Below, piece by piece: positions 1,398-52,035 of a stretch of 64,000 bases of DNA. The notes beneath the pieces are model-generated. The model made no database searches. It had not been told where the DNA came from and was given only the letters and a program-made list of their open reading frames with translations. Numbering within the stretch: position 1 is the first letter of the stretch; each line of letters starts with the position of its first letter. Source of the DNA: Ruditapes philippinarum (Eukaryota); NCBI RefSeq assembly GCF_026571515.1, contig NW_026852967.1:1-64000 (forward strand), in the 5' to 3' direction. Made by a program: the position numbers and the translations under genes.

Positions 1398-4300
1398 ATG
1401 AATCTGGTCAAGTTGTCATGCTTACATCATGTAGAAATGCCTATACTTGGTCGTGAGTATAAAAACTTGTTATTGTTACTCGTCAAAATTATCCCGGACT
1501 TTCTACACGATATTCGAATTTTTCTTTGGTCACTGTAAAATTTTATAACAAAGAGTAAATTATCAATTTTGTACAAAAATATAGAGTATGTTTAAACTAA
1601 CGCCAATTTATTTAAACAAAGCCCCAGTATTAACTCGGGAATAGCAGGGATTTTGATATTTTTTACCAAATTGCTCTATCATTCACTCACTCACATACAT
1701 GTAAGCCTAGTCCTTGCATTAATGTCAAATTCCTGGTAGGGACGTAGATATGTCTGCACGTCAAAGTAGCAAAAAGTTAAAGAGTTGTTTTAAAGAGGAT
1801 AAAAGAAGAATATTAAAATTGTTAAAAAGAGGAGGCTTGAAAATTTGCATGAGACATCTTCAATACACTGCACTGAACTGCTCTGGGGCAGAGAACAGGG
1901 CTACTGCAGGGGATAGGGGTGTCAGATATTCTTCTAGGGGGATAACAACCAGACCATGGTGAATCTTGTAGGAAATGGATAACTAGCTTCTATACGTCTT
2001 GAGTTCCAGTTTTCAAAGCTTAAAGAAATTAGCCCAGTTATATTGCTCTTTAATATTCACTACAGATACATTTGTATTTTGTTATAGCATACATGTAGTC
2101 TAAACTTTAATCATTACAAAGTTTAAAATGAATTTATGTGTAAACATATTTCAGTTGGTACATTCAAGCTTAAAGGGAAAGATCTTATGTATAAAACTTT
2201 GGAAACAGCCCTTGCAGCAGGATATAGATCTATAGGTAATGATTCAGTTTGACATTTCTGTATATGGCTTTTGGTAAACCTTACCAGCTATACTTTTCAG
2301 TATTATCACTTTAAGTATAATGGTAGGTACAATGCACCATATTTGTTACCCATAATTATGAATACTTCTTAGAGTTTAAAAAGTATTTCAAATGATTTAA
2401 ACCTGTTATAGCTTACTTGTGGCAACAAAATTTATCCTTCAACCAAGATCAGCTGTTTGATTTGATTTGATTTGATTGATTGATGGATGGATTGATTGAT
2501 TGATTGACTTATTTAATTAGTTATATAGGTGGGTATATTGTACTAGGTTGCTTGTGTGTTTGTCTCCTATTTTGTTAGTTATTTTGATTAAATTATTTAT
2601 TTTGTGATTTATTTCAGATACTGCTGCAGTGTACAGAAATGAGAGTGACATTGGAGACTGCTTGAAAGAACTTCTTCCAAAGTTCAATCTGGAAAGGAAG
2701 GACATTTTTATAACTAGTAAATTAGGTAATTAATCAGGTTTCAACAGCTCTATTACCATCTGTTTAGCTCAATAGGTAATAGCATTGGTCTGTGAATTGG
2801 GTAATCCAAATTTGATTCCCAGACTGTGCAGGTCCCTTTCATTATGTTTGATTATAAAATTCTTCCTACTGTCATTCGCACTGTACCTGTGCTCTGGCAT
2901 GCACAGAAGTTAAATGATCAGTTCCTTAAGAAAATGGAGGCAACTAGTACATGTACTTGTAAACTGCTTGACAGCATGCACAGGAATAATGCGGTGACTG
3001 AACTTTGCTCTGGTATTAAATTCTATGTGGCTTACTGTCATGATTTGTAGTGACACCTACCAATACCACTACCACCTAGTAAAGTAATGGCAAAAAGGTA
3101 AATCAGCACAACATCTATTTTATTTATAATTTCACTTCCCAACCAAAGAAGTCAATACAGTTTTCAGTATGCCATGTGTCTTTTAAGTATGCCATGATAA
3201 TTTTCCACAAGATTATTGCGAGAATAAACCAGTTCAAATTTTGATGAAGTAAAACTGAAAGCCATGCCAGTTTGCTTCGTAATATTTTCTATTACTTCTA
3301 TTGTAGTGTTGTTTAAATATAAAATTGTAAGGATATATCTATTTACAGAAGTAAACTTTTGATTATCTGTGTAATTAAGTTTAAATGGTTAAAAAAAGGA
3401 AGTGGTTTTCTACAGTCTGCCTCTCAACCCAGGGGTTTATACTGATTAAAGTCCCACAGTGACTGAAGTCACAACCATGTTTCCTGATATTACACCAGAG
3501 TTCTGGTTAGTTGAAGGAAGCAGTCTGATACTAAATTGAGTTGATGATAACTGTTAGTTGAAACTTAAAAACTGACTTGCTATATAGATAGTTCCCAATT
3601 TTTACAATATTTACCTCCCTTCCCAAAGTGGCTGCCATTTTTGGTGATCATTATTCTATATAGTATAAAATGTATAATTGACGAAATATGAAAAATCAAT
3701 ATAAACAGCTTAATTAGATGAATTGTCAAATTCTTTTATAGAAATGAAAGAAAATATTAAAGCACCAAAATGTAAAAGATAATTTATCATTTTTCATGAA
3801 GATGATAGAATTATGAAAGATTTTTATCTTATATAGGGAATGTAATATATTGGGAATGACTCTCAAAATGGTGACCAGGGGAGGTAAAAATTGCTAGGTT
3901 ATAAAGCATCTATTATTGAACTCTTACAGGACCTAAAGATCAAGGTAAAGGTAAATGTAAGGAAGCTTGCTTGAGGTCAATAGAAAATTTACAGACTGGT
4001 TACCTTGATTTATACTTGATACACTGGCCTGGAACTCAAGGCAAGAAACCTGAGGACCAGTCAAATATTCAGCAGAGACAGGAAAGCTGGAATGATCTTG
4101 AAGATCTTCATAAAGAAGGTAAATTCTTGTATTTTTTTCATAGACATGAAAACCCTATTTTAATTTTCAGATTTTACACTGGAGTCGGTCACATATACAT
4201 GATATACATGTATAATTATGCAATGAAAAGTTTAAGCCAATCTTATTTAGTTTGACAACAAAAGTTCTTCAGATTTTTAGTTGCGGCAGGGTCTTACAAA

Positions 4301-7300
4301 ATGAATAGTCTGGAAACAGCCCATGTAAACCCTTCTGGCTACAATTAAACATGTCTCGCTATAACTCAGAATCGTTTGCTATATGTGTTGAAGAAAAGGG
4401 CGAAAATTAAATACAACAGCAAAAAAGAAAATTCTAACAACATGGTTTGAAAGACCCTTGTTTAAAACCCCATAGAAGCAGTTGTCTTCTGTTCATGCAC
4501 AATGTATCTGTTATAACATGAGCTGCCTTTATTATATTATTGAACTAGATCCGGGAAGAGTTAAAAGCTTTTAAATCTTCCCAGATTAGATTGTGTAAAC
4601 ATGTGCAGCATTCATAGTGGATTCGCTAACTTATCTATTGAGTTATTCCCCATGTTATTTTCAAGTAGAAGCAAAAAAGAGAAAAAATTGAAAAGATTTA
4701 ACTGATTATAATAAGTAAACATTCAATTACAGATGTTTGAACTTTTTGGTGTGGTTATGGGGAAACATCCAATACATACATGTAACACACAGATAAATAG
4801 AGGATATTGAATGAGTGAAGGTTCAGTACCAAACTTATTGAACAAGTTGAATAAAATCATATTGTGCAAGCCTGTGGCTAGCATAGTATTGTTTTATTCA
4901 ACAAGTTCAATATATTTAGTATTAAATGTAAAAGAATATAATCTTCTATTTATCACATTTCAAAATATATTATTATTAATTCATGATGAAAACTGGGTAA
5001 AGGTAGACTTTTTCTTGGTAACAGCAAGTAAAATTGATACCAGCCAAATAGGTGGCAGCAATTTTGTGAAAGGTCATGTGCAAATTTCAGTTGTAAATTA
5101 CATGTAGAATATTACAAAAAAAATTATTGTAGGTCTTGTTTGTGGGTTAATTTATACAAGTTTATTCCATTTGGCATTTTTCAGGTAAACTTCGAGCTAT
5201 AGGAGTATCCAACTATGAGCAGAGACATCTAGAAGAGCTCCTGTCCACTTGTTCTATCCCTCCAGCTGTACTTCAGGTATGTCATATCATTACAGGTGTA
5301 TCATATCATTACAGGTATATTATATCATTACAGGTAGGTTTATCATTACATGAATATCACATCATTATAGGTATATAATGTCATAGGTATATCACATCAT
5401 TACAGTTATGTGATATCATTTTAGGTATATCATATCATTACAGGTATATCATTATAGTAATGTCATATCATACAAGAAAAGTTTCCTTCATTCTTGTAGG
5501 CTCATGTAGGTTAAGTTGAGGAAGACTTATTTCTATATAGTTGCGTGATGTCCGTGGCCGAGTGGTTAACATTTTTGACTTCTAACCACTTGTTCCTCAC
5601 AGCTGTGGTTTAGTTCCCAAGAGGGACTTTGTATTATTTCATGTGAGCAAGTTATCCAGCTAGCTTAGGGAACATCGGTGGTTCTACTTGGGTGCCTGTT
5701 TGTGCCTGAAATAATGTACAGAAGGGCACCTGATGTCTTTCTCCTACAATCAGTAAACTAAAGTTGCCATATGTAAAACCCAACCAAAAGAAATCTATAT
5801 ATGACATTGCATTTTGATGTAATTAATATGTTAAAATTGGCATTAAAACCAACCAAAAATGTCAAACAAAAAAGATAAACGATCTGGCTTAACCCTTTAC
5901 TCCATAGATACGTGTTTTAACGCATATGCGACCAGTGCAGATCCAGATTAGCCTGCACATCCTGATCAGGATCTCCACTGTTTCTATTTTATATCCATAA
6001 AAGAATTTCTGACTGAAAAGAGAACAGTGGAGATCCTGATCAGACTGCATGGATGTGCAGGCTGATCTGGCTCTGCACTGGTCGCATATGCGTTAAAACA
6101 TGTATTCATGGGGTAAAGGGTTAAGTAGTAACTCCATTTAGACTTACAATAGACGAGGCAAGATAAGTGAACCTGTGACAAGCTTAATAACATTTCTAGG
6201 ACAGGCTTTATACATTTTATACATTAAATGAACATGAATGTTTATCAAGGGTAAGTTCTAAAGTAAAGCTCTATCCCAACACAATTCTAACACTCTGCTG
6301 TGAGGGACACATGCTTTGAAGCCAATGGCCTTTACCACTTTGCCACTGACGCCCCTAAAAGCCAAATCAATGTACATTAAATCAACAGATGCTCATTTAC
6401 AACACAAAGTTTAAGCCTTTTTCATCTCAGGATTTCAGAAAATCTTAATAACCATTAAAAATGATTACATGATCATATTTTTGATGCCTAACTTGTAAGA
6501 TATTGACACCTGTCAATTATAGACTTGGATGTTGCAATTATGACATTTTATAATAAATATGGGATATATAAAGAAAACAGTGACGGTTCAAATATTTACA
6601 TTGAAACCAAACCAAAGTTACCTAAGGTCTTTCTCCACCAGTAAAGCTGGGACATCGCTATATGACCTATACTGTGTCGGTGTGACGTAAAACCCAATCA
6701 AACAAACAACAAACAAACATCATTTGATAAATAGTAGAAAGATAGATGAATGGAATGTCTTCTATATATTACAGATAGAGTTTCATCCTCATCTTGTACA
6801 GAGTTCACTAGTATCATTCTGTAAACAACATAACATACATTTCCAGGCATATTCTTCACTAGGGACAACTTCAGATGATAATAAAGTAAGTCCTTTTTGT
6901 ATAATTATGTGACCAAAAAAAAACCATCTGTAATTTCCACGTGCTCAACAATCACAAGTTCACAACTTCTGATTTGTACCAAATGTGACAGTCTAACATT
7001 TTTCTTTGTATTGGTATATCATGATGCAGGATCCATAAATATATCATTATTAGACAAGCGTGTATGGCTTTTTAATGTGCCATCACGGAACAACATAAGT
7101 ATTTTATTTCTTTGTTTGATTTTCAGTGGGGGGGGGGGGGGGGGGTCCCAGTTTTAAAACATATTTTGGGGGTTGATCTACCTTATTGGTTTTCTGGATA
7201 ATAAACCAGTAATTGCCTACATTTCCACAAGTAACAAGTGGTGTCAGAGAGGCAAATGATCATTAGGCTCAATATCACTGAAAATATATGTGTGGCCTGA

Positions 7301-23400: not shown

Positions 23401-26400
23401 TTTTTTAAAATTTTGAAATTCACCATTTTCATGTGTAAATGTTGAATTCTGACTGTTGCTAGTAGGCGTTGACGGTATCTTGCAGTTATCACTGTTGTTC
23501 ATTTATACGCTAAATCAAACCGAACCTGCAATACATATAACTATGTTCAATTTGTCATTTTGGGGCGCTCCTTAGGGATTCCGTTTCTCTGTATTTACAT
23601 GATAGACCCATACTGTTGTTAGATAACCGAATTATTTTAATCTTTTGAAAAACATCTACATGATCTAGTTTTGTCTTCATTGATATACTAGTACATTATA
23701 TCAAAATAAAGTGTCATGGCTAATCTATACGGATATGATAGACTTGATAAAACTTCTTTCAGGTACGATTGGCTTACTCTGCATGATAACTGCTAAAGCT
23801 ATGGGAGCTACAAATGTTTGTATAACTGGTGAGTGATGGGTACACGTTTTTAAATGTTTCTTTATCTTATTTTAAAACAATACAAACTGTTATGATGACT
23901 ACTGCATCTAGCAAGAAAATTTTATTTAATTAAATATTTAATAGAAGTTGATAAAACAAAACTGCAAATGAAGATGTCTTTAGTTTAAATTGTAAAAAAA
24001 CTATATATCTGATGTAAAAATTATTATTTGAATTTTAAGAATAAAATACTTCCAAAATGCTTGTATGAAATAATTATGGTATGGTAATTTATTGCTTTTA
24101 AAGTGAATGATGAATGCACAAAATCATTGCTAAACGGATAAAACCCTACTTAAAATAGCATTCTAACACTATCGGATTTTTTTCTATATAGACAAAGAAG
24201 GCCGGAAGCGTGCATTATTCTACAACAATGCACTCGCCGTTCTTATTATCTCCCTGTGTATTTTCACATTGAAGGCGCCATTTTGTTTAAAAAATCTGAT
24301 AAATTAAAACAATTTTTTTCGAATTTTGTTGTGAAAACTATCTAGAATGAAAGAAAATGGTCTAACTAAGAAAATTAATCCGAACACCAATATCTTTAAT
24401 TCAGTCGTTAACGCTGTACAGACGTTTAAAGTGTTGTTTACGTGACGTCACAATGTAGCGCCAAACAGCACGTGCAAAACAATCAAATCAAGTTCGCCAT
24501 TTAATGTCGCAAACGAGTTTAGTTTTACATTTATTTCACTTTTAATAATTTGTATTTCGCTTGGAAAATTATAAACTGAAATAAATAAACAAACAAAGTT
24601 GTATCAACGTTTTCAAAATTCGTTATTTTCAAAATGTTTCTACAAACGGTAGATTTAACAGTTTTTTTTTTCAACCCACTGGAACGGCCTCTAAAGAACG
24701 TTTCTATTGGAAACTCTGAGGCGAAAACAAATTCAACCACCAAACATAAAGTCCAACGTTATAATAAAAATTATATTTTTTCTTGACGTATTAGAATGGA
24801 AATAGATATCAATTCTTCGTGCATTATTGTATAATAATGCACGTTTTTCGTTCAAATGCTTTGTAATTAATCACTCAGGCCTATCGGCCTTCGTGATTAT
24901 ATTACTACGCATTTGAACTCAAACCGTGCATTATTCTACAACAATGCACTCAGAATTGATATCTATTTCCTAAATATAATGTTTTGTTCCGGAACATTTT
25001 ATTCTGTTTAATACGTGCATTATTTATGTGTATAAAATAACAGAGACATTTTATGTTACAATTTATCGGGAATCAAACCACGGATGTAAAATAAATCCGT
25101 GATCAAACATATAATAATGGAACCAATATATTTCTACTGTTAAGATAAAGATTTATACCCTTTAATGTGCGAAATGTCATAAAACATAGAACTTAAAATG
25201 CAAACGAGTGAAATATATACTTTTCTCGTTAATTAACTGGTTCTGATCTCCTTATATATAATTCATATAACAAATTACACATGCCAAGTGACTAAGGTCG
25301 TTAACTTCAAACCACTTGCCCCTCACTGCTGTGGGTTAAAATCCCGCCAGCCAGATTGTGGGGAGTTATTCTTCTAGCTTACGTAACATCGGTAGTTCTA
25401 CTCAGGTGCATAGAATAATGCACAGAGAAGCATCTGAGGTCTTCTTCCACTAGTAAAGCTGGAATGTTGTCGCCATATGACCTACATAAAGCGTTATAAA
25501 AACGCCTACAAACGAGATAGAAAAAGGGACAGGGAAATCATGCTTTTTGACCAATATATCTCATAGGAAAAAAATCAAAGGACCATACTTCTGTCAAAAA
25601 ATAATCAAATAGATAATAAAATACCAAATACTTGATGACAAACATTTTGTGAAAGTTTGGTTGAAATTTAGGGCTGTTTGCGCACAGAAGAAGTTGGTTA
25701 TGCACAACCATTAACCCGCTGACATTTACCAATCTAGAGAGCTCTGTTGGAAAAACCTTGTTCAAATTTGTAATTCTTAAAAAGTATATATAACATGTAA
25801 CACGTATTATAGAGCCGCTATATTTATCATATTTATGATCATATTGCAGATGTTGTTGAAGAAAGACTGAAGCTTGCTAAACAGTTAGGAGCTACTCATA
25901 CTGTTCTTACAAACTCTTCTGACGTGGACTCTGTCGTCAAAGAAATTCACAGTATCATGGGAGAAATGCCTGACATAACTATTGAATGTACAGGGAACAA
26001 CTTTTGCCAACGATTAGCTATAATGGTAAGCATGGCATTTGACATATCTGCTTGTTTAAAAGTATGTTCGTTGATAATATTTTTTTTGTACGTGCCCAGC
26101 GCTGCACAGTAGATTTCGTAAAGAATATCCTGCATGAAATAATAAGTCGCACTCGACTAATACTTTGACAATGTGTAAACATAGCTCTACTGAATTGAGA
26201 CCTTAAGATATGTCTTGCTTTGCCGTAATTTGTAAACAACCAAAAAGAGTTACATATTTTGTATATACATATGATACAAATAGTGTGAATTTACTCATTT
26301 TCGTTAATTTAATTGTATGGTGTGTTATACCTTTGTGTTTCAAAGTATTCATATAAGTGGTCACAACGAAGTTAATGAATTTTGAATAAATCAAGTCATG

Positions 26401-27083
26401 GTGTCTGTTCAATTACAGTCTACAACACCAGGCGGCTGTGTTGCTATAGTAGGATATGGGGCAGAAGAAGTAACTTTACCTTTAGCAGTACTGTGTCAAA
26501 GACAAATTGACCTCCGACCTTCATGGAGATACGATCAACATTGGTAAATTTTACTTGATGAAATTAATTTCTTAAACATTTGAATTGGATCACCAATGAA
26601 TGACCTATCTTTTATATCAAGATAAGAAATGGCTCCAAACGATGTTAACCCTAATGGTTGGTCCATGTCGCAAACATTCAAATGGGTTGCACCGTCATAA
26701 TGCATTGTTTGAATATTATAATTAAATGGCTAATTTTCTGATGCAAATTATATATGTATTAATCAGTACATTTATTTGTTATTATTTGGAATAAGAATGA
26801 GTACCTTCAAGAAAAGCAATACGTAAAATAAATCTGCATAATTTTGACACTTTACATCTTATATGAAACAATATATTCAGTAGCTTTTATGTTTTAGGTT
26901 CAACTATACATAATTCTGTGTTTCAGTTATCCAATAGCAATAGATATGGTAGCATCTGGTAAAGTCAACATTAAACCATTGGTGACACATAGATTTACTT
27001 TAGAGCAAACTACAGATGCTATTCAAGTGGCAGCCAGTCGTAGACCAGGGGTCCTTAAATGTATGATAACTTGTAACGAGTGA
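17412..27083 (+). CDS. SORD: Sorbitol dehydrogenase-like zinc-dependent medium-chain dehydrogenase (351 aa), 9 exons
   Basis: Exons 17412-17459, 18567-18600, 20993-21157, 21629-21794, 22635-22753, 23763-23828, 25850-26025, 26419-26543, 26927-27083 (1056 nt, GT-AG). Motifs GLCGSD, LGHEAS, VGDRVALEPG, CNKCKNC…NMC, GALMEPLAV, GSGTIG, ITD (acidic, NAD-type), WRY and KPLVTHRF. The symbol means SORD-like; orthology is not proven. Confidence 0.92.
18128..18420 (+). repeat. Degenerate AT-rich minisatellite in SORD intron 1
   Basis: Recurrent ttcacaat(g/t)aa…acaagtatg(t/c)ttt…acaataaatgc units. Confidence 0.6.
24190..24972. mobile_element. Non-autonomous element ending in a palindrome of about 173 bp (Crypton-like architecture, tentative) in SORD intron 6
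   Basis: 24798-24970 folds on itself (GGAAATAGATATCAATTCT…AGAATTGATATCTATTTCC, centre aggcc-tatc-ggcct). CGTGCATTATTCTACAACAATGCACTC is repeated at about 24209 and 24925. The internal part 24269-24620 recurs at 33003-33350. Confidence 0.6.
25284..25500 (+). mobile_element. Family-1 tRNA-derived SINE in SORD intron 6
   Basis: aaggtcgtt..cttcaaaccacttgcccctcac..ctgtgggtt…gtaaagctgg…gccatatgaccta. Confidence 0.78.
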
Positions 27084-39446: not shown

Positions 39447-39513
39447 TTTTTGTGTCGCCCTCTACAGGATAGTGGCGACATATAGGGATCACTTCTCCGT
39501 CGTTTAACCATAC

Positions 39514-39544
<31 letters not shown>

Positions 39545-39670
39545 CGTGATCCGTCTGTCACAAAACTTGTCCGGACTTCTCCTAAAAATTTCATCTTAAT
39601 TTACAGGCATGATTTGTACCAAATCTAGTTGTTCATATCGCCGCCATTTTCGGCATATTGTGAAGAATTG
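39447..39670 (+). mobile_element. 5' fragment of a second Helentron/HINE-type element
   Basis: TTTTTG-TGTCGCC…GGCGACA inverted repeat followed by a (GTCT)n microsatellite; truncated where SORD intron-7 homology starts. Confidence 0.6.
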
Positions 39671-40459
39671 AGTTCATATGAGTGCATGCTGTGTTATACG
39701 TGCTAAACGATGCACAGCAGATTATGTATAAAGTCCTACGAAAAAAAGTGAGTCGAAACTGATTGATACTGTGACAATGTGTAAACATAGCCCTACTGAA
39801 TTGAAACATTAAAGAAATGTCTCACTTTGTCTATAGATATATGTGAACAACTAAAAAGAGTTACATATTTTGCATACACATAAGACACAAATTGTGTGGG
39901 GTTCCTTTCTAATTCAATTAATATGTATTTGTTATAACTCAAAGGTTCTCAAAGTATTTGCATGTGTTTAATTGGTCATAACGAAGGTAATGAACTTTGA
40001 ATTAATTAAATCATAGCGGTTGTACAATTACAGTCTACAATACAGGGCGGCTGTGTTGCTATAAAGTAAACGGAAAAAGGGATCGAGTAAGCGTACACTT
40101 TGCATATTTAGCCCCGCCTATAAATTAAGCACGAATTTCTTATAAAGCGTTATCATCATGATTAAAATAGACTATAAATCTGTGGAAATGATCAGTGTTA
40201 CTGTATGTTAGTGCATATGCTTAATCCCCCTAATAAATATACACGAATGTCTTATAAAAATGGAAAAAGGCTTTAAAGTGTTAAGTCGTGCAATAATGGT
40301 GCTTTCACTCATATGCCAAATGATTTAATCAGCATATGAACCTATGTGAGGATATCAAGTTAGATGACTAAAGGATCATCTGAATGTACATACAATGTAT
40401 ACTTATGTTCATATGAAAAATATATTAGAAATCACATTATAAGAGGACCAAGTTTATAC

Positions 40460-43400
40460 GGATCAGGGGATCATCTAGATGTGCACATACTATAATATTC
40501 ATTGAACAGAAATAAAGGGATACCGATCACGTTAGATGACCAGGGTATCATCTACATGTAAATTTATTCTTTCTTATTACGGAACAGATATATGGGTATC
40601 ATGTAAGCTGACCAGGGGATACGATCTATATGTACACATACTTTAGTATTCATTGAACAGATATAAGGAGATCACGTAATATGACAAGTGGGTCATCTAG
40701 ATTTACATAAACTATAGTTTTCATTTGGAACAGATATCAGGTGATCACGTAAGTTGACCAGGGAATCATCTTAATGTACATATACCGTACTTTTCATTGA
40801 ACAGATATAAGGGGATCACGTAAGATGACCAGTGGGCCATCCTGATGCTACATATACTATATTTTGCATTGAACAGATATAAGTGGATCATGTTAGATGA
40901 CCATGGGGTTCATCTAATTTTACAGATATACTATAGTTTTTATTGAACAGAAATTAGGGGATCACGTAGATGACCAGGGGATCGTCTAAGATGTTGCATA
41001 TAGTATAAGATTCATTTGAACAGATATCAGGGGATCACGTAGATGACCAGGGGAATTATCTACATGTATCTACTCTTTCTAATTATGGAAAGGATATATG
41101 GAGATCACGGATAAGATGACAAGGGGATCAACTATATTTAAGATTTACTATAGTATCAAATTGAACAGAAAATAAAGGGATCACGAAAATGAGCAGGGGA
41201 TCATCTACATGTACATTATTCTTTCTTATTATGGATAACAGATATATGGTCTATCATGTAAGCTGTCAAGGGGATCATCTAAAGATGTACATGAACTCTT
41301 TCTTATTATGGAAGGGATATTAAAGGGATAACGTAAGATGACCAGGGGATCATCTTAATTTTACATAATGTCTATATTTCATTGAATAGAAAATAAGGGG
41401 ATCTTGTAAGATTGACGATAGGGAAATCATCTAGATGTTGCATATACTGTTAAGTTCAATTGAACAGATTATAAGGGTGATCACATAAGATGACCAGGGG
41501 ATTCATTCTACATGTACATATCTCTTTCTAATTATGCGAACGGATATACAGAAATCATCGAAAGATGACAACGCGGTTAAACTATATCAAAATTTACTAT
41601 AGTATCCATTGAACAGAATTAAAGGGATCACGTTAGATGACCAGGGGTCATTTAGATGTACTTATATGACTTTCATATTTTGGAGCAGATAAATGGGGGG
41701 ATGATTTTAGCTGGACCAGGGGATCATCAGATTTACATATACTATAGTATGTCATTGAATAGATCTTAAGGAGAATCACGTTAAGATGACAAAGCTGATC
41801 GTCTATTATTACATTATACTATAGCATTCATTGAACAGAAATAAAGGTGATCAACGTGGTAATGAGCAGGGGATCATCTACATGTACATTTTCTTTCTTA
41901 TTATGGAACCAGATATATGGGTATTATGTTAAGCCAGACCAGAGGGATCATTCAGATTTACATATACTATAGTATTCATTGAACAGATCAAGGAGATCAG
42001 TAAGATACAAAGGGATCGTCTATATGTACATATACTATAGTATTCATTGGGATCACGTAAGATGACCAACGGGGATCATCTAGATGTACATAATACGAGG
42101 GGTTGTTCAAAAATAGTAATAGGAATGAGCAGTCTTGCATATTCATATTCCATCCCAATCCTAAAATACTTTCATTATGTATCAGTGATCGGTAAAATGT
42201 TTTTCTACAATGTATGCATAAGTTTATTTCATATTATTGTGATGAAAGGGCGCGTTTCCCTGTGATACTGAATAACCATGGTAACACGCACCGGCGCGCA
42301 CAATTAAAAATAGTTTATTAAAGCTATGTTGTACTTCTAATCAATTCATAATTATACTCCGGTTTGTTCCATAATATTCCACCAACACATTTCCTTCATA
42401 TTGAAATGACATTATATCTAAATTTGACGTCATTCAGGCATGAAATGGCATAATTATTTAGTTTTGAACAGCTGTGCGGTAAATGTAGAAAATATGGCAC
42501 TCAGTAAACAAACGAAACTTAAATTAAATTACTGTTTGATCGTTAAATTGTGCCAACGAATTGGCAAATATTCTTACAGATACATACAAAATGATAAAAT
42601 TAAGTAAGGAAAATTATTCTGCCATCAGGACACTCGTTTTCAGCTGGTACAATCAATTTAAAAACGGCGAATACAAAATCTCTAATAGGAAATTGTGAGA
42701 ATGAAAGCGGAAAATTGACGGGACGTTAGTGACGTTAATTGCAAAAACGCTGTAAATGGATCGACGGTAAACGGTACGCGGACTGTTCCGCGCACTCTTT
42801 TTGTCTGCTTCGCGATCTACTTAAGTTTTCACCAAAGAATTGTATATAAAACCATTCTATCAAACACTATTTCATTGTCTCTCATTGGATTATACTTGCA
42901 GTTTAAATAAATTGATATAATAATGATTTAACGGTAATGATTTAGTAGTATTTTCCCCCAATTTTATTTTAATAGATGATACTTTTCATTATACATATTG
43001 TTATTTTACTTAAATATAATCATATTGATTTAAAAACGTATGATGTGAAAAATAATAACATAAATCAATTTTGCATAATTTAGCATTAAAAGTCCATGCT
43101 TGTTGATTTCCCAGTTTACTCAAAATATTCGAGAAAAGTGGAGAATGGCCAGCTATCGGGCATTTTTCTTGGAGAGTTGAACGAAATTGTGATCGGTTTC
43201 TTTCTCGATAAATCTCCACATATGAGACATGATCATATGAACATGATTCAATCACCAAGAGCACTAGGAAGAATACTTTCAAGATGGATGACACTTGTTA
43301 TATTTGCATTTAGTTAACGACGTCATGAAAGTCATTTTCTGTATTGTCAGCGTGCGCCGAGTTTCGTACCCCTTGTCATTTGAAAAATTCAAAAAATTGT

Positions 43401-44050
43401 TATTTGTAAACATTTTGTATTGATTTTTTCACTTTATATAGAGATCATGTTCCGATATTTGTGTCTTGTAATGTTATGTACGTAAATAAACAAGTGTGAA
43501 CAGTAGAGCTACAGTCCTATTACTTTTTGAACAACCCTCGAACAATAGTATTCAGTTTGAACAGAAATAAGGGAATCACGTAAGATGACCAGGGGATCAT
43601 CATTAGATGTACACATTACTATAGTATCATTGAACAGAAATAAGGGGATCACGTAAGACGAGAGGGGATCATTCTAGATGTACATATATATAGTATTCAT
43701 TGAAAAGAATAAGGGATCACGCAAGATAGGCAAGGGTATCATCTAGGATGTACATATACTATAGTAATTCATTGAAAAATAAATAGGGGATCACATAAGA
43801 TGACCAGCAGATCATTCTAGATGAACACATGTATAGTTTTTCATTAAACAGAAAGAAAGAGATCAGGTAAGTCGGTCATCTATGTGTACAATCATTCTTT
43901 TTTCATTATGGAACAGATATGAGGGGGTAGTATCGCGTAAATGGATCAGGTTGATCATCTTGCCATGTTACATAATTATACTATAGCTTTCATTGAACAG
44001 AAATAAGGGGATCACGTGAGATGACCAGGTTGGTCATCTAGAATGTATAA
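40460..44050 (-). repeat. 71-bp satellite array, left arm (interrupted at 42096-43540)
   Basis: tagatgtacatatactatagtattcattgaacagaaataaggggatcacgtaagatgaccaggggatcatc units, with many 1-nt indels. Confidence 0.9.
42096..43540 (+). mobile_element. Degenerate Tc1/mariner element nested in the satellite
   Basis: TA|CGAGGGGTTGTTCAAAAATAGTAATAGGA … TCCTATTACTTTTTGAACAACCCTCG TIRs. A relic of the mariner N-terminal HTH (RTLVFSWYNQFKNG) lies near 42628-42670. The right TA is not preserved. Confidence 0.78.
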
Positions 44051-44061
44051 ATAATATTTTT

Positions 44062-44290
44062 GCGTCCGTGGGCCAAGTGGTTAAAGGTCGTTGACTTCAA
44101 ACCACTTTGCCCCTCACCGCTTTGGGTTCGAATTCCGACAGGCGGACTTTGAGATTCTTTCATGTGATGAAGCTATCCAGCTTGCTTACGGAACGTCAGT
44201 GGTTCTTATCAGGTGCCCGTTCGTGCCTGAAATAATGCACGGAAGGGTACCTGAGGTCGCCCTCCACCAGTAAAGCTGGAACGTCGCGAT
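44062..44290 (+). mobile_element. Family-1 tRNA-derived SINE at the symmetry centre of the foldback element
   Basis: A box, B box GGTTCGAATTCC and a body nearly identical to the copy at 48020; it lacks the 3' tail. Confidence 0.85.
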
Positions 44291-46980
44291 AATCTTACGT
44301 GATCCACTTATTTCTGCTCAATGAAAACTATAGTATATGTACATCTAGATGATCCTATCGTCATTTTACGTGATCCCATCAAATCTGTTCCATGTTGAAA
44401 ACGAGTATGTGCATCTACATGATATCCTTGTAATCTAACGTGATCCCCTTATTTCTGTTCAATGATAACTATAGTATATGTACATCTAGATGATCCACCG
44501 GTCATTTTACGTGATCCCCTCATATATGTTCCTTAATATAAAAGAGTATATGAACATCTACATGATCCCTTTGTCATCTACGTGATCCCCTTATCATCTT
44601 ACGTGATCCCTTTAATTCTTTTCAATGAAAATTATAGAATATGTACATCTAAATGATCCCCTTGTCATTTTACGCGATCCCCTCATATATGTTCCATAAT
44701 GAAAAAGAGTATGTACATTATATGATCTCCTGGTCGTCTTACCTGATCCCCTTATTTCTTTCTCTTTAATGAAAACTAAAGTATGTGTTTATTTAGATGT
44801 ACCGCTGGTCATCTTACGTGATCCCCTTTTTCTGTTTAATGAATACTATAGTATATGTACATCTAGATGATACCTTTGTCATCTTACGTGATCCCTTTAT
44901 TAAATGTATTTGTTCCATTATAAAACAATAGAATATGTACATCTACATGATCCCCTTGTCATTTTACGCCATCCCCTCATATTTGTTCCATAATGAAAAG
45001 GAGTATGTACACATAGATGATCCCCTGGTCGTCATATCTGATCTCCTTATTTCTTTCTGTTTAATGAAAACTAAAGTATGTGTCCATCTATATGATCCGC
45101 TGGTCATCGCACGTGATCCTTTTATTTCTGTTCAATGAATATTATAGTATATGTACATCTAGATGTTCCCCTGGTCATCTTACATGATCCCCTTATTTCT
45201 TTTCAATGCAAACTATAGTATATGTACATCTAGATGATACCCTTGTCATCTTACGTCCCCCCTTATTTCTTTCAATGAAAACTATAGTATATGTACATCT
45301 AGATGATACCATTGTCATCTTACGTGATCCCCTTATTTCTGTTCAATGAATACTATAGTATATGTACATCTAGATGATCCCCTTGTCATCTTTCTTGATC
45401 CCCTTATTTCTGTTCAATGAATACTTTAGTATATGTACATCTAGATGATCCCCTTGTCATCTTACGTGATCCCCTAATTTCTGTTCAATAAATACTATAG
45501 TATATTTACATCTAGATGATACCCTTGTCATCTTACGTGATCCCCTTATTTCTTTTCAATGAATACTATAGTATATGTTCATCTAGATGATACCATTGTC
45601 ATCTTACGTGATCCCTTTATTTCTGTTCAATGAAGTCTATAGTATATGTACATCTACATTATCCCCTTGTCATTTTACGCGATCCCCTCATATATGTTCC
45701 ATAATGAAAAAGAGTATGTACACATAGATGATCTCCTTATTTCTGTCTGTTTAATGAAAACTAAAGTATGTGTTCATCTAGATGATCCGCTGGTCATCTT
45801 ACGTGATCCCTTTTTTTTTTCAATGAAAAATATAGTATATGTACATCTAGATGACACCATTGTCATCTTACGTGATCCCCTTATTTCTTTTCAATGAATA
45901 CAATAGTATATGTACATCTAGATGATCTGCTGGTCATTTTACGTGATCCCCTTATTTCTTTTCAATGAATACTATAGTATATGTACATCTAGATGATACT
46001 ATTGTCATCTTACGTGATCCCCTTATTTCTGTACAATGAATACTATAGTATATGTACATCTAGATGATCCCCTTGTCATCTTACGTGATCCCCTTATTTC
46101 TGTTCAATGAATACTATAGTATATGTACATCTAGATGATACCCTTGTCATCTTACGTGATCCCTTTATTTCTTTTCAATGAATACTATAGTATATGTACA
46201 TCTAGATGATACCCTTGTCATCTTACGTGATCCCGTTAAACGATGTATTTGTTCCAAAATAAGAAATATTATATGTACATCTAGATGATCACCTGGTTAT
46301 ATTACGTGACCCCCTTATATCTGTTCAATGAAAACTATACTATATGAACATCTAGGTGATCCCCTTGTCATTTTACGCGATACCCTCATATCTGTTTCAT
46401 AATAAAAAAGAGTATGTACATCTAGATGATCCCCTGGTCATCGTACGTCGTCCCCTTATTTCTTTCTGTTCAATTAAAACTATATTAAATGTACATCTTC
46501 ATGATCCCCTTGTCATCTACGTGATCCCCTTATCATCTTACGTGATCCCTTTAATTCTTTTCAATGAATACTATAGTATATGTACATCTAGATATTCCCC
46601 TTGTATTCTTACATGATCTCCTTACATCTGTTCCATAATAAAAAGAGTTTATGTAGATTAGATTATCCCCTTGTCATTTATTTGATCCCCTTATATATGT
46701 TCCAGAATGAAAAAGAGTATATACATCTAGATGTCACCTGGTCATCTAACGTGATCCCCTTATGTCTGTTCAATGAAAACTATAGTATATGTACATCTAG
46801 ATGATCCCTTGGTCATTTTATTTGATCCCCTTACATCTGATATGTAATGAAAAAAAGTTTATGTACATCCAGATGATCTTGTAATCTTACGTGATCCCCT
46901 TATTTCTGTTCCATGATAACTATAGTATATGTACATCTAGATAATCCCCCGGGCATCTTACGAGATACCCTTATTTCCAT
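44291..46980 (+). repeat. 71-bp satellite array, right arm
   Basis: Unit agatgataccattgtcatcttacgtgatccccttatttctgttcaatgaatactatagtatatgtacatct; period measured at 45301, 45372 and 45443. A second subtype carries tatgttccataatgaaaaagagtatg. Confidence 0.95.
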
Positions 46981-47803
46981 AATAAAAATGTTTATATGTA
47001 TTTCCCTCACATATGTTGTTTAAGAACTACAGTGTTTATACACCTTAAAGACCAGATGACCGTTCTTCATATATATTCCATCACTACTAATGTATATTTA
47101 CATCTAGATGATTCCCTGCTCATCTTACATTAACCTCTCATGCATCTTCTATCAAAACTAGTATATGTTCATGCAGATGATCTCTTGGTCCTCTTATAAT
47201 GTGATTCCTCATATATCTTTAATGAACATAAGTATGCATTGTGTATAAGTGCATTCAGATGATCCTATAATCATCTTACTTGATATCCTAACATAGGTTC
47301 ATCTGCTGATTAAATTATTAGGCATATGAATGAAAAACCATTATTGTACAATTGTATGTCCTGAAGTTTAAAGCCTGTTTCCATTTTCTAGACATATGCA
47401 TAAATTTATTAGGAGGATTAAGCATATGCATTATTTCACAGTGACGCTAATCAGGATGATAACGCTTTATCAGAAATTCGTGCTTAATTTATAGGCGGGG
47501 CTAAATATGCAAAGTGTACGCTCACTCGATCCCTTTTTCCGTTTACCGTTGCTATAATAGGATATGGGGCAGAGGAAGTAACTTTACCTTAGCTGTAATG
47601 TGTCAAAGACAAATTTACCTCCGACCTTCATGGAGATACGATCAACATTGGTAAATTTTAATTGATGAAATTAATATCTTAAACATTTGAATGGAAACAC
47701 CAATTTATTATGTACATTTCATATTATGACAAGATATGGCTCCAAACGAATCTGATTAGTTGGTTGCCAATTTGAGTCTTTGCCACGCCTCAAATATCCA
47801 ATT

Positions 47804-48019: not shown

Positions 48020-48294
48020 GGGCGTCTGTGGCCGAGTGGTTAAGGTCGTTGACTTTAAACCACTTGCCCCTCACCGCTGTGGGTTCGAATCCCAACAGGG
48101 ACTTTGGATTCTTTCAAGTGAGGAAGCTATCCAACTAGCTTACGGAACGTCGGTGGTTCTACTCAAGTGCCCGTTCGTGCCTGAAATAATGCACGGAAGG
48201 GCACATGAGGTCTTCATCCACCAGTAAAGCTGGATATCGTCGCGATATGACCTATACTGTGTCGATGTGACATAAAACCCAAAACAAAAACAAA
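48020..48294 (+). mobile_element. Full-length family-1 tRNA-derived SINE
   Basis: A box TGGCCGAGTGG, B box GGTTCGAATCC and (AAAAC)n tail. Flanking GAATCGTACA/GAATTGTACA is a possible TSD. Confidence 0.9.
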
Positions 48295-51665: not shown

Positions 51666-52035
51666 TGTTTGTTTGTTTGGGTTTCACCACAGGTAAACGT
51701 TGCGTGGCCATGACTTACACTAAACCCCCGTTCCCCCTCTACAACCCAAAACCCTAAAAAAATTATAAAAAAAAAATTTTTATGACTTAAATATTATTTA
51801 AGTCATAAAATTTTTTTTTTTCATAATTTTTTTTTTAGGGTTTTGGGTTGTAGAGGGGGAACGGGGGTTTAGTGTAAGTCATGGCCACGCAACGTTTACC
51901 TGTGGGTTTCACGTCGCACCGACACGGTATAGGTCCATATGGCGACGTTCCAGGTTTAATGGTGGAGAGAGACCTAATGTGTCCTTCCGTGCATTATTTC
52001 AGGCACGTTGTTTGAAATCAACGGCCACGGACGTC
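51666..52035 (-). mobile_element. Internally deleted family-1 SINE (host of the hairpin element)
   Basis: Reverse complement of the SINE 3' end (gtgcctgaaataatgcacggaagg…gtgtcggtgcgacgtgaaaccc, (AAAC)n tail). Confidence 0.75.
51687..51905. mobile_element. 219-bp hairpin element inserted in a minus-strand SINE tail
   Basis: CCACAGGTAAACGTTGCGTGGCC…GGCCACGCAACGTTTACCTGTGG. The arms are identical except in the poly(A/T) tract. GTTTCA is duplicated at 51681-51686 and 51906-51911. Confidence 0.88.

What the first reader, a model, noticed from the sequence alone, without database searches (positions are those of the whole stretch)
40055..47557. 7.5-kb foldback transposon built from an inverted 71-bp satellite, inserted into a duplicated SORD exon
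Seen: the exon-8 copy reads …GGCTGT-GTTGCTATAA, then 7483 bp, then GTTGCTATAA-TAGGATATGGGG. The empty site is known from the parental exon (26419-26543), which makes a 9-10 bp TSD clear. The element has unique outer TIRs of about 370-390 bp, then roughly 30 (left) and 38 (right) satellite units in opposite orientations, and no transposase of its own. Known: 9-11 bp TSDs with long modular, tandem-repeat-filled TIRs typify Mutator-related Foldback elements such as Drosophila FB. Inference: this is a non-autonomous foldback family that could disperse and amplify a satellite and promote local rearrangement. I do not recognise it as a described family.
Basis: partly seen in the sequence, partly recalled or inferred. 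Interest (0 to 1): 0.85.

Follow-up and report, generated by a model that had tools for sequence, protein, structure and literature searches.

The report
Clam foldback transposon carrying satellite arrays
This is a real 7.5-kb "foldback" jumping gene with no transposase of its own, one of about 50 young copies in this roughly 1.4-Gb marine invertebrate genome; its kind is already known from flies and nematodes, so it is a new family rather than a new type of element.

Summary
Window 40065-47547 is a 7,483-bp element ending GGTAAACGG…CCGTTTACC (first base A in this copy). A perfect 10-bp duplication, GTTGCTATAA, flanks it, and a paralogue at 26440-26453 shows the uninterrupted site.

It belongs to a genuine family:
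- The terminal 23-mer occurs 106 times in the genome and 0 times in the reversed control.
- Of 20 other paired copies, 14 have perfect 9-bp target duplications and 1 has a 10-bp duplication.
- Thirty ends sit in different flanks and differ from their majority rule by a median of 1%.

All large copies share one polar plan. There are two distinct outer ends (83-86% alike) and two inverted arrays of 71-bp units. The centre is either a 230-bp 3'-truncated tRNA-derived SINE (this copy) or a diverged repeat variant.

The arrays are collinear between copies (85-97% identity) but only 75-83% alike within a copy. They therefore move as whole blocks and are not a locally homogenised satellite.

No ORF has a Pfam domain.

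The 8-10-bp duplications (mode 9) favour Mutator/Phantom-type mobilisation, as for Drosophila FB, Tetris and nematode Tm1. No transposase could be linked to the family.

Other first-reader notes in this scan describe foldback elements elsewhere in this genome, and one may be this same family.

The parts
40055..40064 (.). Left target-site duplication GTTGCTATAA (10 bp; the first 9 bp correspond to the family's usual 9-bp TSD).
   Evidence: identical to 47548-47557.
40065..40463 (+). Alpha outer end. The terminus reads AGTAAACGGAAAAAGGGATCGAGT, where all 29 other alpha ends examined begin GG. About 290 bp are non-repetitive and then grade into degenerate units.
   Evidence: 40 scored matches at 86-100% out of 504 candidates; 30 ends, median 1% from majority rule, all in different flanks; 61 raw reads of another sample carry diverse flanks that stop at 40066.
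40464..42096 (+). Left array, outer part: about 22 units of 71-73 bp. Each unit contains two roughly 20-bp subrepeats with a GGGGATCA core.
   Evidence: Collinear with the arrays of other copies at 85-97%.
42097..43541 (.). Nested, unrelated 1.45-kb non-coding TIR element (mariner-like MITE; TIR CGAGGGGTTGTTCAAAAA…). It is specific to this copy.
   Evidence: Searches show the TIRs. One search finds no counterpart in other copies. One search shows the same MITE family inserted independently in L048. One search finds no Pfam domain.
43545..44061 (+). Left array, inner part: about 7 increasingly degenerate units.
44062..44291 (+). Central loop: a 3'-truncated tRNA-derived SINE (B-box-like GGTTCGAAT). 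The truncation point and orientation are the same in every SINE-bearing copy.
   Evidence: the SINE family has more than 4,500 candidates genome-wide; free copies run on for about 45 bp plus a (CAAA)n tail. ARAGORN and Rfam do not call a tRNA.
44292..46977 (-). Right array: about 38 units of 71 bp in inverted orientation, partly organised as a 213-bp higher-order repeat.
   Evidence: A 5-unit block matches other copies at 96% but matches its own array at 93% at most.
46978..47547 (-). Beta outer end (degenerate units, then about 260 bp of unique sequence), ending …CCGTTTACC.
   Evidence: 92-97% identical to the beta ends of other full-length copies and 83% to the alpha end.
47548..47557 (.). 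Right target-site duplication GTTGCTATAA.
26440..26453 (+). Uninterrupted homologous site (GTTGCTATAGTAGG) in a paralogous zinc-dehydrogenase (SORD-like) exon.
   Evidence: The flanking intron is 75% identical.

Best explanation
This is a non-autonomous, foldback-type cut-and-paste DNA transposon.

Shown:
- It is one of roughly 40-60 copies of a young family with fixed termini GGTAAACGG…CCGTTTACC.
- Target duplications are 8-10 bp, with a mode of 9 bp.
- The family has a conserved polar layout: alpha end, array, loop, inverted array, beta end.
- Whole 2-4-kb arrays of 71-bp units are copied to each new site as a block. Multi-unit gains and losses follow, and internal deletion can reduce a copy to a 110-bp mini-element.
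- All SINE-loop copies descend from one master that had acquired, and 3'-truncated, a SINE at the turn-around point.
- The window copy landed in an exon of a SORD-like paralogue and was itself later hit by a MITE.

Inferred:
- It is mobilised in trans by a DDE transposase that makes 9-bp staggered target cuts. The most likely source is a Mutator-superfamily (Phantom-like FLYWCH-MULE) enzyme encoded elsewhere in the genome.
- The iterated GGGGATCA-containing subrepeats may act as secondary transposase-binding sites, as shown for Galileo.
For: Family membership and copy number:
- The terminal 23-mer has 106 hits at 2 mismatches or fewer, against 0 in the reversed control.
- The alpha end has 504 candidates.
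- Raw-read depth over the element is 53-85 against about 1.37x genome coverage in an independent sample, and 61 reads show diverse flanks ending at 40066.

Target duplications:
- 14 of 20 other copies have a perfect 9-bp TSD.
- One other copy (L046) and the window copy have 10-bp TSDs, and L045 has about 8 bp.

Shared layout and youth:
- 18 large copies have the same layout, with distinct alpha and beta ends.
- The SINE has constant orientation and an identical truncation point.
- Arrays are collinear between copies.
- The 30 alpha ends differ from their majority rule by a median of 1.0% and a minimum of 0%.

No coding capacity.

Independent samples: contigs from two other samples cross the left junction. 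X2 crosses with 59 nt inside the element, and X17 with 30 nt and no differences.

Candidate transposases: the genome holds 38 MULE and 28 FLYWCH domain matches. At least 7 are adjacent FLYWCH+MULE pairs, and one of these is a multi-copy family.

Literature:
- FB-like TIRs with 9-bp TSDs go with a Phantom transposase in Tm1 (PMC3169594).
- Tetris was assigned to Mutator on its 8-10-bp TSDs (PMC4079207).
- The tandem repeats in Galileo's long TIRs bind its transposase (PMC3688188).
Against: - No copy encloses a MULE, FLYWCH or IS1595 domain, and none of those domain hits shares a contig with an element terminus. The one exception is a decayed MULE 3.2 kb outside the copy on C3090.
- The superfamily call therefore rests on TSD length and architecture alone. 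Foldback architecture is known to be polyphyletic (Galileo belongs to the P superfamily).
- Merlin elements also make 8-9-bp TSDs, and 31 IS1595-type domains exist in the genome.
- The resemblance between the terminal motif and the array unit (13 of 16 bases) is not significant against shuffles: 70 of 500 shuffles score as high.
- Seven long copies (10-16 kb) could not be fetched, so a coding copy among them is not excluded.
Confidence: 0.8

Rival explanations
1. The family is the same real foldback family, but it is mobilised by a transposase outside the Mutator superfamily. Candidates are Merlin/IS1595-type (8-9-bp TSDs), a P/THAP Galileo-like enzyme, or another DDE family.
For: - Foldback architecture has arisen in several superfamilies (PMC3688188, PMC3169594).
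- No MULE domain is linked to any copy.
- 31 IS1595-type DDE matches exist in the genome.
Against: - TSDs are 9 bp in 14 of 17 copies that have a clear duplication, and 10 bp in 2.
- From my own knowledge: P/Galileo elements give 7-8 bp and hAT gives 8 bp. Merlin elements mostly have short TIRs of about 20-25 bp and often 8-bp TSDs.
- No IS1595 hit lies on a contig with an element terminus.
Confidence: 0.15
2. The structure is an assembly artefact or a one-off local inverted duplication of a satellite, not a mobile element.
For: - Inverted tandem arrays are hard to assemble.
- No long reads could be laid on the region. Only short-read contigs and 151-nt reads were available, and they do not span the arrays.
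Against: - More than 50 termini lie in different unique flanks, with exact 9-bp duplications.
- 18 copies share one architecture.
- The left junction is seen in contigs of two other samples.
- A paralogue shows the uninterrupted site.
Confidence: 0.01
3. It is a Helentron/Helitron-type or MITE-like tandem-repeat carrier of the kind already described as the vehicle of satellite-like repeats in bivalves.
For: In oysters and clams, dispersed satellite-like arrays are typically attributed to non-autonomous Helentrons (PMC7492417, PMC8268682).
Against: - The ends are long inverted repeats with 9-bp target duplications.
- From my own knowledge, Helitrons have neither TIRs nor TSDs.
- The arrays are in inverted orientation.
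Confidence: 0.01

Closest known systems
Drosophila melanogaster Foldback (FB) elements
   Same: Arms make up nearly the whole element and are built of tandem repeats that become more regular inwards. Arm length varies between copies. TSDs are 9 bp. Most copies are non-coding. (FB features are from my own knowledge and as summarised in PMC3169594 and PMC3688188.)
   Different: No sequence relationship was tested. Here the two ends are distinct (alpha and beta, 83-86% alike) and the arms are only about 70-75% alike. The repeat unit is 71 bp. The loop is a fixed SINE fragment. No coding copy (the equivalent of FB4) was found.
Tetris (Drosophila virilis foldback transposon carrying TIR-220 repeats), PMC4079207
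   Same: A non-autonomous foldback element with an outer TIR domain, internal tandem repeats and a variable middle. TSDs are 8-10 bp. No autonomous partner has been found. It links a transposon to a satellite-like repeat.
   Different: Tetris has only 3 structurally complete copies, and its repeats also form independent kb-size satellite arrays. Here there are about 50 young copies. All satellite hits listed (150 of 532) lie on contigs that hold element copies. The host is a marine invertebrate, not a fly.
Tm1 (Meloidogyne Mutator/Foldback family), PMC3169594
   Same: Composite TIRs of variable length built of tandem repeats. The outermost motifs are asymmetric. TSDs are mostly 9 bp (8-10), with no target consensus. 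MITE-like deletion derivatives exist.
   Different: Tm1 repeats are 14 bp and the elements are about 1-2.6 kb. One Tm1 subgroup encodes a Phantom-like (FLYWCH+MULE) transposase, which anchors the family in Mutator. No such anchor exists here.
Galileo (P-superfamily foldback-like element), PMC3688188
   Same: Long, internally repetitive TIRs. The tandem repeats were shown to hold extra transposase-binding sites, which is the mechanistic model borrowed here.
   Different: From my own knowledge, Galileo makes 7-bp TSDs and encodes a THAP/P-type transposase. Here the TSDs are 9 bp.

Membership tests
Foldback-like elements (structural class) | Long terminal inverted repeats that make up most of the element and are internally built of tandem repeats | tested here: met
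   the arrays are in opposite orientation in the window copy and in 18 other large copies.
Foldback-like elements (structural class) | Arm length varies between copies; most copies are non-coding | tested here: met
   Element sizes are 2.3-9.1 kb in fetched copies, and up to 15.9 kb from paired termini. There is no ORF with a Pfam domain in the window copy.
Mutator superfamily (MULE, including Phantom) | Target-site duplication of 8-11 bp, typically 9 bp | tested here: met
   14 of 20 other copies have a perfect 9-bp TSD, 1 has 10 bp and 1 has about 8 bp. The window copy has 10 bp.
Mutator superfamily (MULE, including Phantom) | A cognate autonomous element with the same termini encoding a MULE-domain DDE transposase (plus FLYWCH for Phantom) | tested here: inconclusive
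   - There are 38 PF10551 and 28 PF04500 matches in the genome, and at least 7 are adjacent pairs.
- None lies inside a known copy.
- None shares a contig with a listed terminus, except a decayed MULE 3.2 kb outside the C3090 copy.
P superfamily foldback-like (Galileo type) | 7-8-bp TSD | tested here: not met
   the TSD mode is 9 bp.
Merlin / IS1595-like | 8-9-bp TSD with short (about 20-25 bp) TIRs and an IS1595-type DDE transposase | tested here: inconclusive
   The TSD length is compatible. The TIRs here are hundreds of bp plus arrays. There are 31 PF12762 matches, none on a contig with an element terminus.
Helentron / Helitron-N satellite carriers of bivalves | No TIRs and no TSDs, with a 3' hairpin | tested here: not met
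   TIRs and 9-bp TSDs are present.
Any described family in Repbase or Dfam | Sequence match of the ends or the 71-mer to a catalogued consensus | not testable with these tools
   - No Repbase or Dfam library was available.
- Full-text searches found no foldback element described in molluscs.
- A metagenome scan for the terminus found nothing.

The most novel reading that the evidence does not exclude
The family is mobile now, yet no element in the genome carries both its termini and a transposase. That would make it an 'orphan' cross-mobilised by a Phantom-like FLYWCH-MULE enzyme whose own ends differ. Signs of current mobility are copies identical to the family majority rule and one sample whose contig stops matching exactly at the left junction.

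In this reading the roughly 60 iterated GGGGATCA-bearing units per copy serve as the recognition platform. The SINE in the loop, which still has its Pol III-type box B, would drive transcription into the arms and make each copy a hairpin-RNA (small-RNA) source.
Probability: 0.1. Interest if true: 0.6.

Novelty: new member of a known kind. Interest (0 to 1): 0.4.

Why it matters
In bivalves, satellite-like repeats scattered through the genome have so far been explained mainly by Helitron-type carriers. This family shows a second route: a cut-and-paste foldback element that copies whole 2-4-kb arrays to new sites.

With about 50 young copies, precise ends, a built-in SINE marker and natural mini-derivatives, it is a clean system for three questions. 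How do long repetitive TIRs evolve? How fast do arrays gain and lose units after transposition? Which transposase moves them?

It also interrupts an exon here. Insertions like this one are plausible sources of presence/absence and loss-of-function variation in a farmed species. None of this changes the general understanding of foldback elements.

Tried and rejected
Searches and fetches that gave nothing:
I did not try to read those letters another way.
- MULE, FLYWCH and IS1595 domain searches gave no hit inside any copy.
- A metagenome scan for the terminus found 0 matches.
- ARAGORN and Rfam found no tRNA or other RNA family in the element.
- Pfam found nothing in the five ORFs of 70 aa or more.
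- A search for an allelic contig with the empty site found only paralogues at 75% identity or less.
- The Phantom paper (PMC2927773) is not held.

Ideas rejected:
- Loop inversion by recombination between the arms. Once ends were typed over 420 bp rather than by the 23-mer, the SINE orientation was constant relative to the alpha and beta ends.
- A locally homogenised satellite. Blocks are more alike between copies than within a copy.
- The array unit being derived from the terminal motif. The 13-of-16 match is not significant.

Unresolved:
- In sample X1, a contig carrying 5 SNPs stops matching exactly at 40064 and has unmatched letters beyond the match.
- The 1-bp deletion in a T run of the interrupted exon could be real or a long-read consensus error.

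My working note says 16/20 perfect TSDs. The exact count is 14 perfect 9-bp plus 1 perfect 10-bp among 20.
Full report
**1. The observation**

- On the left, the sequence runs …GGCTGT GTTGCTATAA (40055-40064), and the element begins at 40065 with AGTAAACGGAAAAAGGG.
- On the right, the element ends …CCCTTTTTCCGTTTACC at 47547. GTTGCTATAA (47548-47557) and then TAGGATATGGGG follow.
- A paralogous exon at 26419-26544 reads GTTGCTATAGTAGG without interruption.

TRF and the repeat finder give these features:
- About 22 units of 71-73 bp at 40464-42096, and about 7 more at 43545-44050.
- About 38 units in the opposite orientation at 44292-46977.
- Outer ends that are 97% complementary over the first 99 nt.

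The window copy has no ORF of 100 aa or more, and none of its five ORFs of 70 aa or more has a Pfam domain.

**2. It is a family, not a one-off**

- The first 395 bp find 504 candidate places in the window's own 1.408-Gb, 15,874-contig genome. The 40 that were scored are 86-100% identical.
- The terminal 23-mer, with up to 2 mismatches, occurs 106 times, against 0 for the reversed control.
- From the hit coordinates I paired 35 sets of facing termini and fetched 20 of them with 100-bp flanks.

With the element defined as G+GTAAAC…GTTTAC+C, the target duplications of those 20 are as follows:

| TSD state | Copies |
|---|---|
| Perfect 9 bp | 14 |
| Perfect 10 bp (as in the window copy) | 1 (L046) |
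| About 8 bp | 1 (L045) |
| Decayed 9 bp | 1 (L033) |
| None | 3 (L034, L038, L039) |

The duplicated sequences show no consensus.

Thirty alpha ends lie in thirty different flanks. All begin GG except the window copy, which begins AG. They differ from their majority rule by a median of 1.0% (minimum 0%; window copy 2.3%), and pairwise by a median of 2.5%. The family is therefore young.

**3. Independent samples**

- Contigs from two other samples cross the left junction. X2 crosses with 59 nt inside the element. X17 crosses with 30 nt inside and no differences.
- In raw reads of a further sample (X21), 61 reads carry diverse, unrelated sequence up to position 40066. That is what many insertions sharing one terminus should produce.
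- Depth over the element in X21 is 53-85 against about 1.37x genome coverage, which implies roughly 40-60 ends.
- One contig of sample X1 carries 5 SNPs, stops matching exactly at 40064, and has further unmatched letters. I give it little weight.

No long reads were available, so the exact unit counts in the arrays are unverified.

**4. Anatomy of the family**

The two variants of the terminal 23-mer do not follow this split. The window copy has the 'A' variant at both ends, yet its right end is beta-type.

Every large copy shows the order: outer end, array, short centre, inverted array, outer end.

There are two kinds of centre.
- **SINE loop.** The window copy and at least ten others have a 230-bp fragment of a tRNA-derived SINE as the centre.
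  - The SINE is itself very abundant, with more than 4,500 candidates at 92-93% identity at unrelated loci.
  - Free copies, including one at window 48022-48290, run on for about 45 bp plus a (CAAA)n tail. The element-borne fragment is therefore 3'-truncated.
  - The truncation point and the orientation relative to the alpha and beta ends are the same in every such copy. They descend from one master element.
- **Repeat-variant loop.** A second subfamily (L033, L036, L040, L044, L045, L047) has a 450-1,260-bp block of a diverged ~70-bp repeat variant and no SINE.

I first suspected that the loop flips by recombination between the arms. Proper typing of the ends removed that idea.

**5. The arrays are carried as blocks**

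- A 5-unit block of the window's right array matches other copies at 94-96%, but matches its own array at 93% at most.
- Sliding 284-bp windows along the window copy find their best partners in other copies in collinear order at 85-97%. The best matches within the copy are 75-83% over most of the arms.
- The two arms of one copy are only about 70-75% alike.

So this is an old, internally diverged array that is copied whole at each transposition. Multi-unit indels follow; for example, the window copy lacks about 850 bp that other copies have near the alpha end.

All satellite matches listed lie on contigs that also hold element termini or the loop SINE (150 of 532 matches were listed). I saw no free-standing satellite.

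A 110-bp derivative (L032) keeps only 28 bp of one end and 82 bp of the other, between a perfect 9-bp duplication. It shows how mini-elements arise.

**6. This copy's history**

- The target was an exon of a zinc-dehydrogenase (SORD-like) paralogue. The Pfam match is ADH_zinc_N at E = 2.8e-4 on 42 aa.
- That paralogue lies within a roughly 10-13-kb unit that is repeated several times in the window.
- The interrupted exon also has an apparent 1-bp deletion in a T run, which may be real or a consensus error.
- After insertion, the left array received a 1.45-kb non-coding element with ~30-bp TIRs resembling mariner ends (42097-43541). It is absent from the other copies. The same MITE family hit copy L048 independently.

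**7. Mechanism**

TIRs plus 8-10-bp duplications (mode 9) mean cut-and-paste transposition by a DDE transposase acting in trans.

In the literature this combination points to Mutator/Phantom.
- Tm1 has FB-like TIRs, 9-bp TSDs and a FLYWCH+MULE transposase (PMC3169594).
- Tetris was assigned to Mutator on its 8-10-bp TSDs alone (PMC4079207).
- Galileo shows that the tandem repeats in long TIRs can hold extra transposase-binding sites (PMC3688188).

The genome holds 38 MULE and 28 FLYWCH domain matches. These include at least seven adjacent pairs and a multi-copy family with identical FLYWCH scores.

However, none lies in a known copy or on a contig with a listed terminus. The one exception is a decayed MULE 3.2 kb outside the copy on C3090.

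Merlin-type transposases (31 matches) cannot be formally excluded.

A 13-of-16 resemblance between the terminal motif and the array unit is not significant.

I therefore hold 'real foldback transposon family' at above 0.95 and 'Mutator/Phantom-mobilised' at about 0.6.

**8. Comparison and novelty**

The element works like Drosophila FB, Tetris and Tm1. Membership of Mutator is unproven, because the defining transposase link was tested and came out inconclusive.

Full-text searches found no foldback element described in molluscs. Bivalve papers cite Tetris only as a fly example and attribute dispersed satellite-like repeats to Helentrons. Repbase and Dfam could not be searched.

An earlier follow-up note in this scan (s1-813815) calls this genome the Manila clam. 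I did not verify that. From memory, the assembly size and contig number fit a published long-read assembly of that species.

The scan holds 37 'foldback' notes on this genome. One of them (s1-793120, 7.9 kb with satellite-built arms) may be this same family.

Verdict: a new, well-characterised member of a known kind, of moderate interest.

Noticed in passing
window 42097-43541; also L048 about 6180-6420: A 1.45-kb non-coding element with ~30-bp TIRs (CGAGGGGTTGTTCAAAAA…, reminiscent of mariner ends) is nested in the left array. A shorter member of the same family is inserted independently in another foldback copy.
   Followed up: partly
window 48022-48290 (also 5550-5737, 25283-25467, 51938-52007): Free copies of the tRNA-derived SINE whose truncated form is the foldback loop. 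The full form carries about 45 bp more and a (CAAA)n tail. There are more than 4,500 candidates genome-wide.
   Followed up: partly
window 39464-39586: The two ~40-80-bp stretches flanking a (GTCT)n microsatellite (39514-39544), at 39464-39504 and 39546-39586, have enormous contig depth in all runs (up to about 3e5, against 10-30 for neighbouring unique sequence). This points to a very abundant short repeat.
   Followed up: no
window ~25.3-29.9 kb, 36.6-40.06 + 47.56-49.1 kb, 49.1-51.6 kb, 56-63.4 kb: A ~10-13-kb unit is repeated in tandem at 67-88% identity. The foldback sits in one unit.
   Followed up: partly
window 47583-47592 versus 26482-26492: The interrupted exon copy has CCTTAG where the paralogue has CCTTTAG. 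This apparent 1-bp deletion in a T run breaks the frame. It could be a true pseudogene lesion or a long-read consensus error.
   Followed up: no
L048 (G000:C3504:86567-93941), about 950-2540 and 4255-5845: Inside this foldback copy lie two 1.6-kb blocks of a different ~145-bp tandem repeat, inverted relative to each other at 93.5% identity. This may be a second foldback-like structure nested in the first.
   Followed up: no
L032 (G000:C1606:32398-32505): A 110-bp mini-element made only of the two termini, with a perfect 9-bp duplication GTGAAATGT. It is an extreme internal-deletion derivative.
   Followed up: yes
G000:C3090:28475-28759: A decayed MULE domain (4 stops) lies 3.2 kb outside the alpha end of the foldback copy at C3090:17823-25301. 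It is probably coincidental, and the sequence could not be fetched.
   Followed up: no
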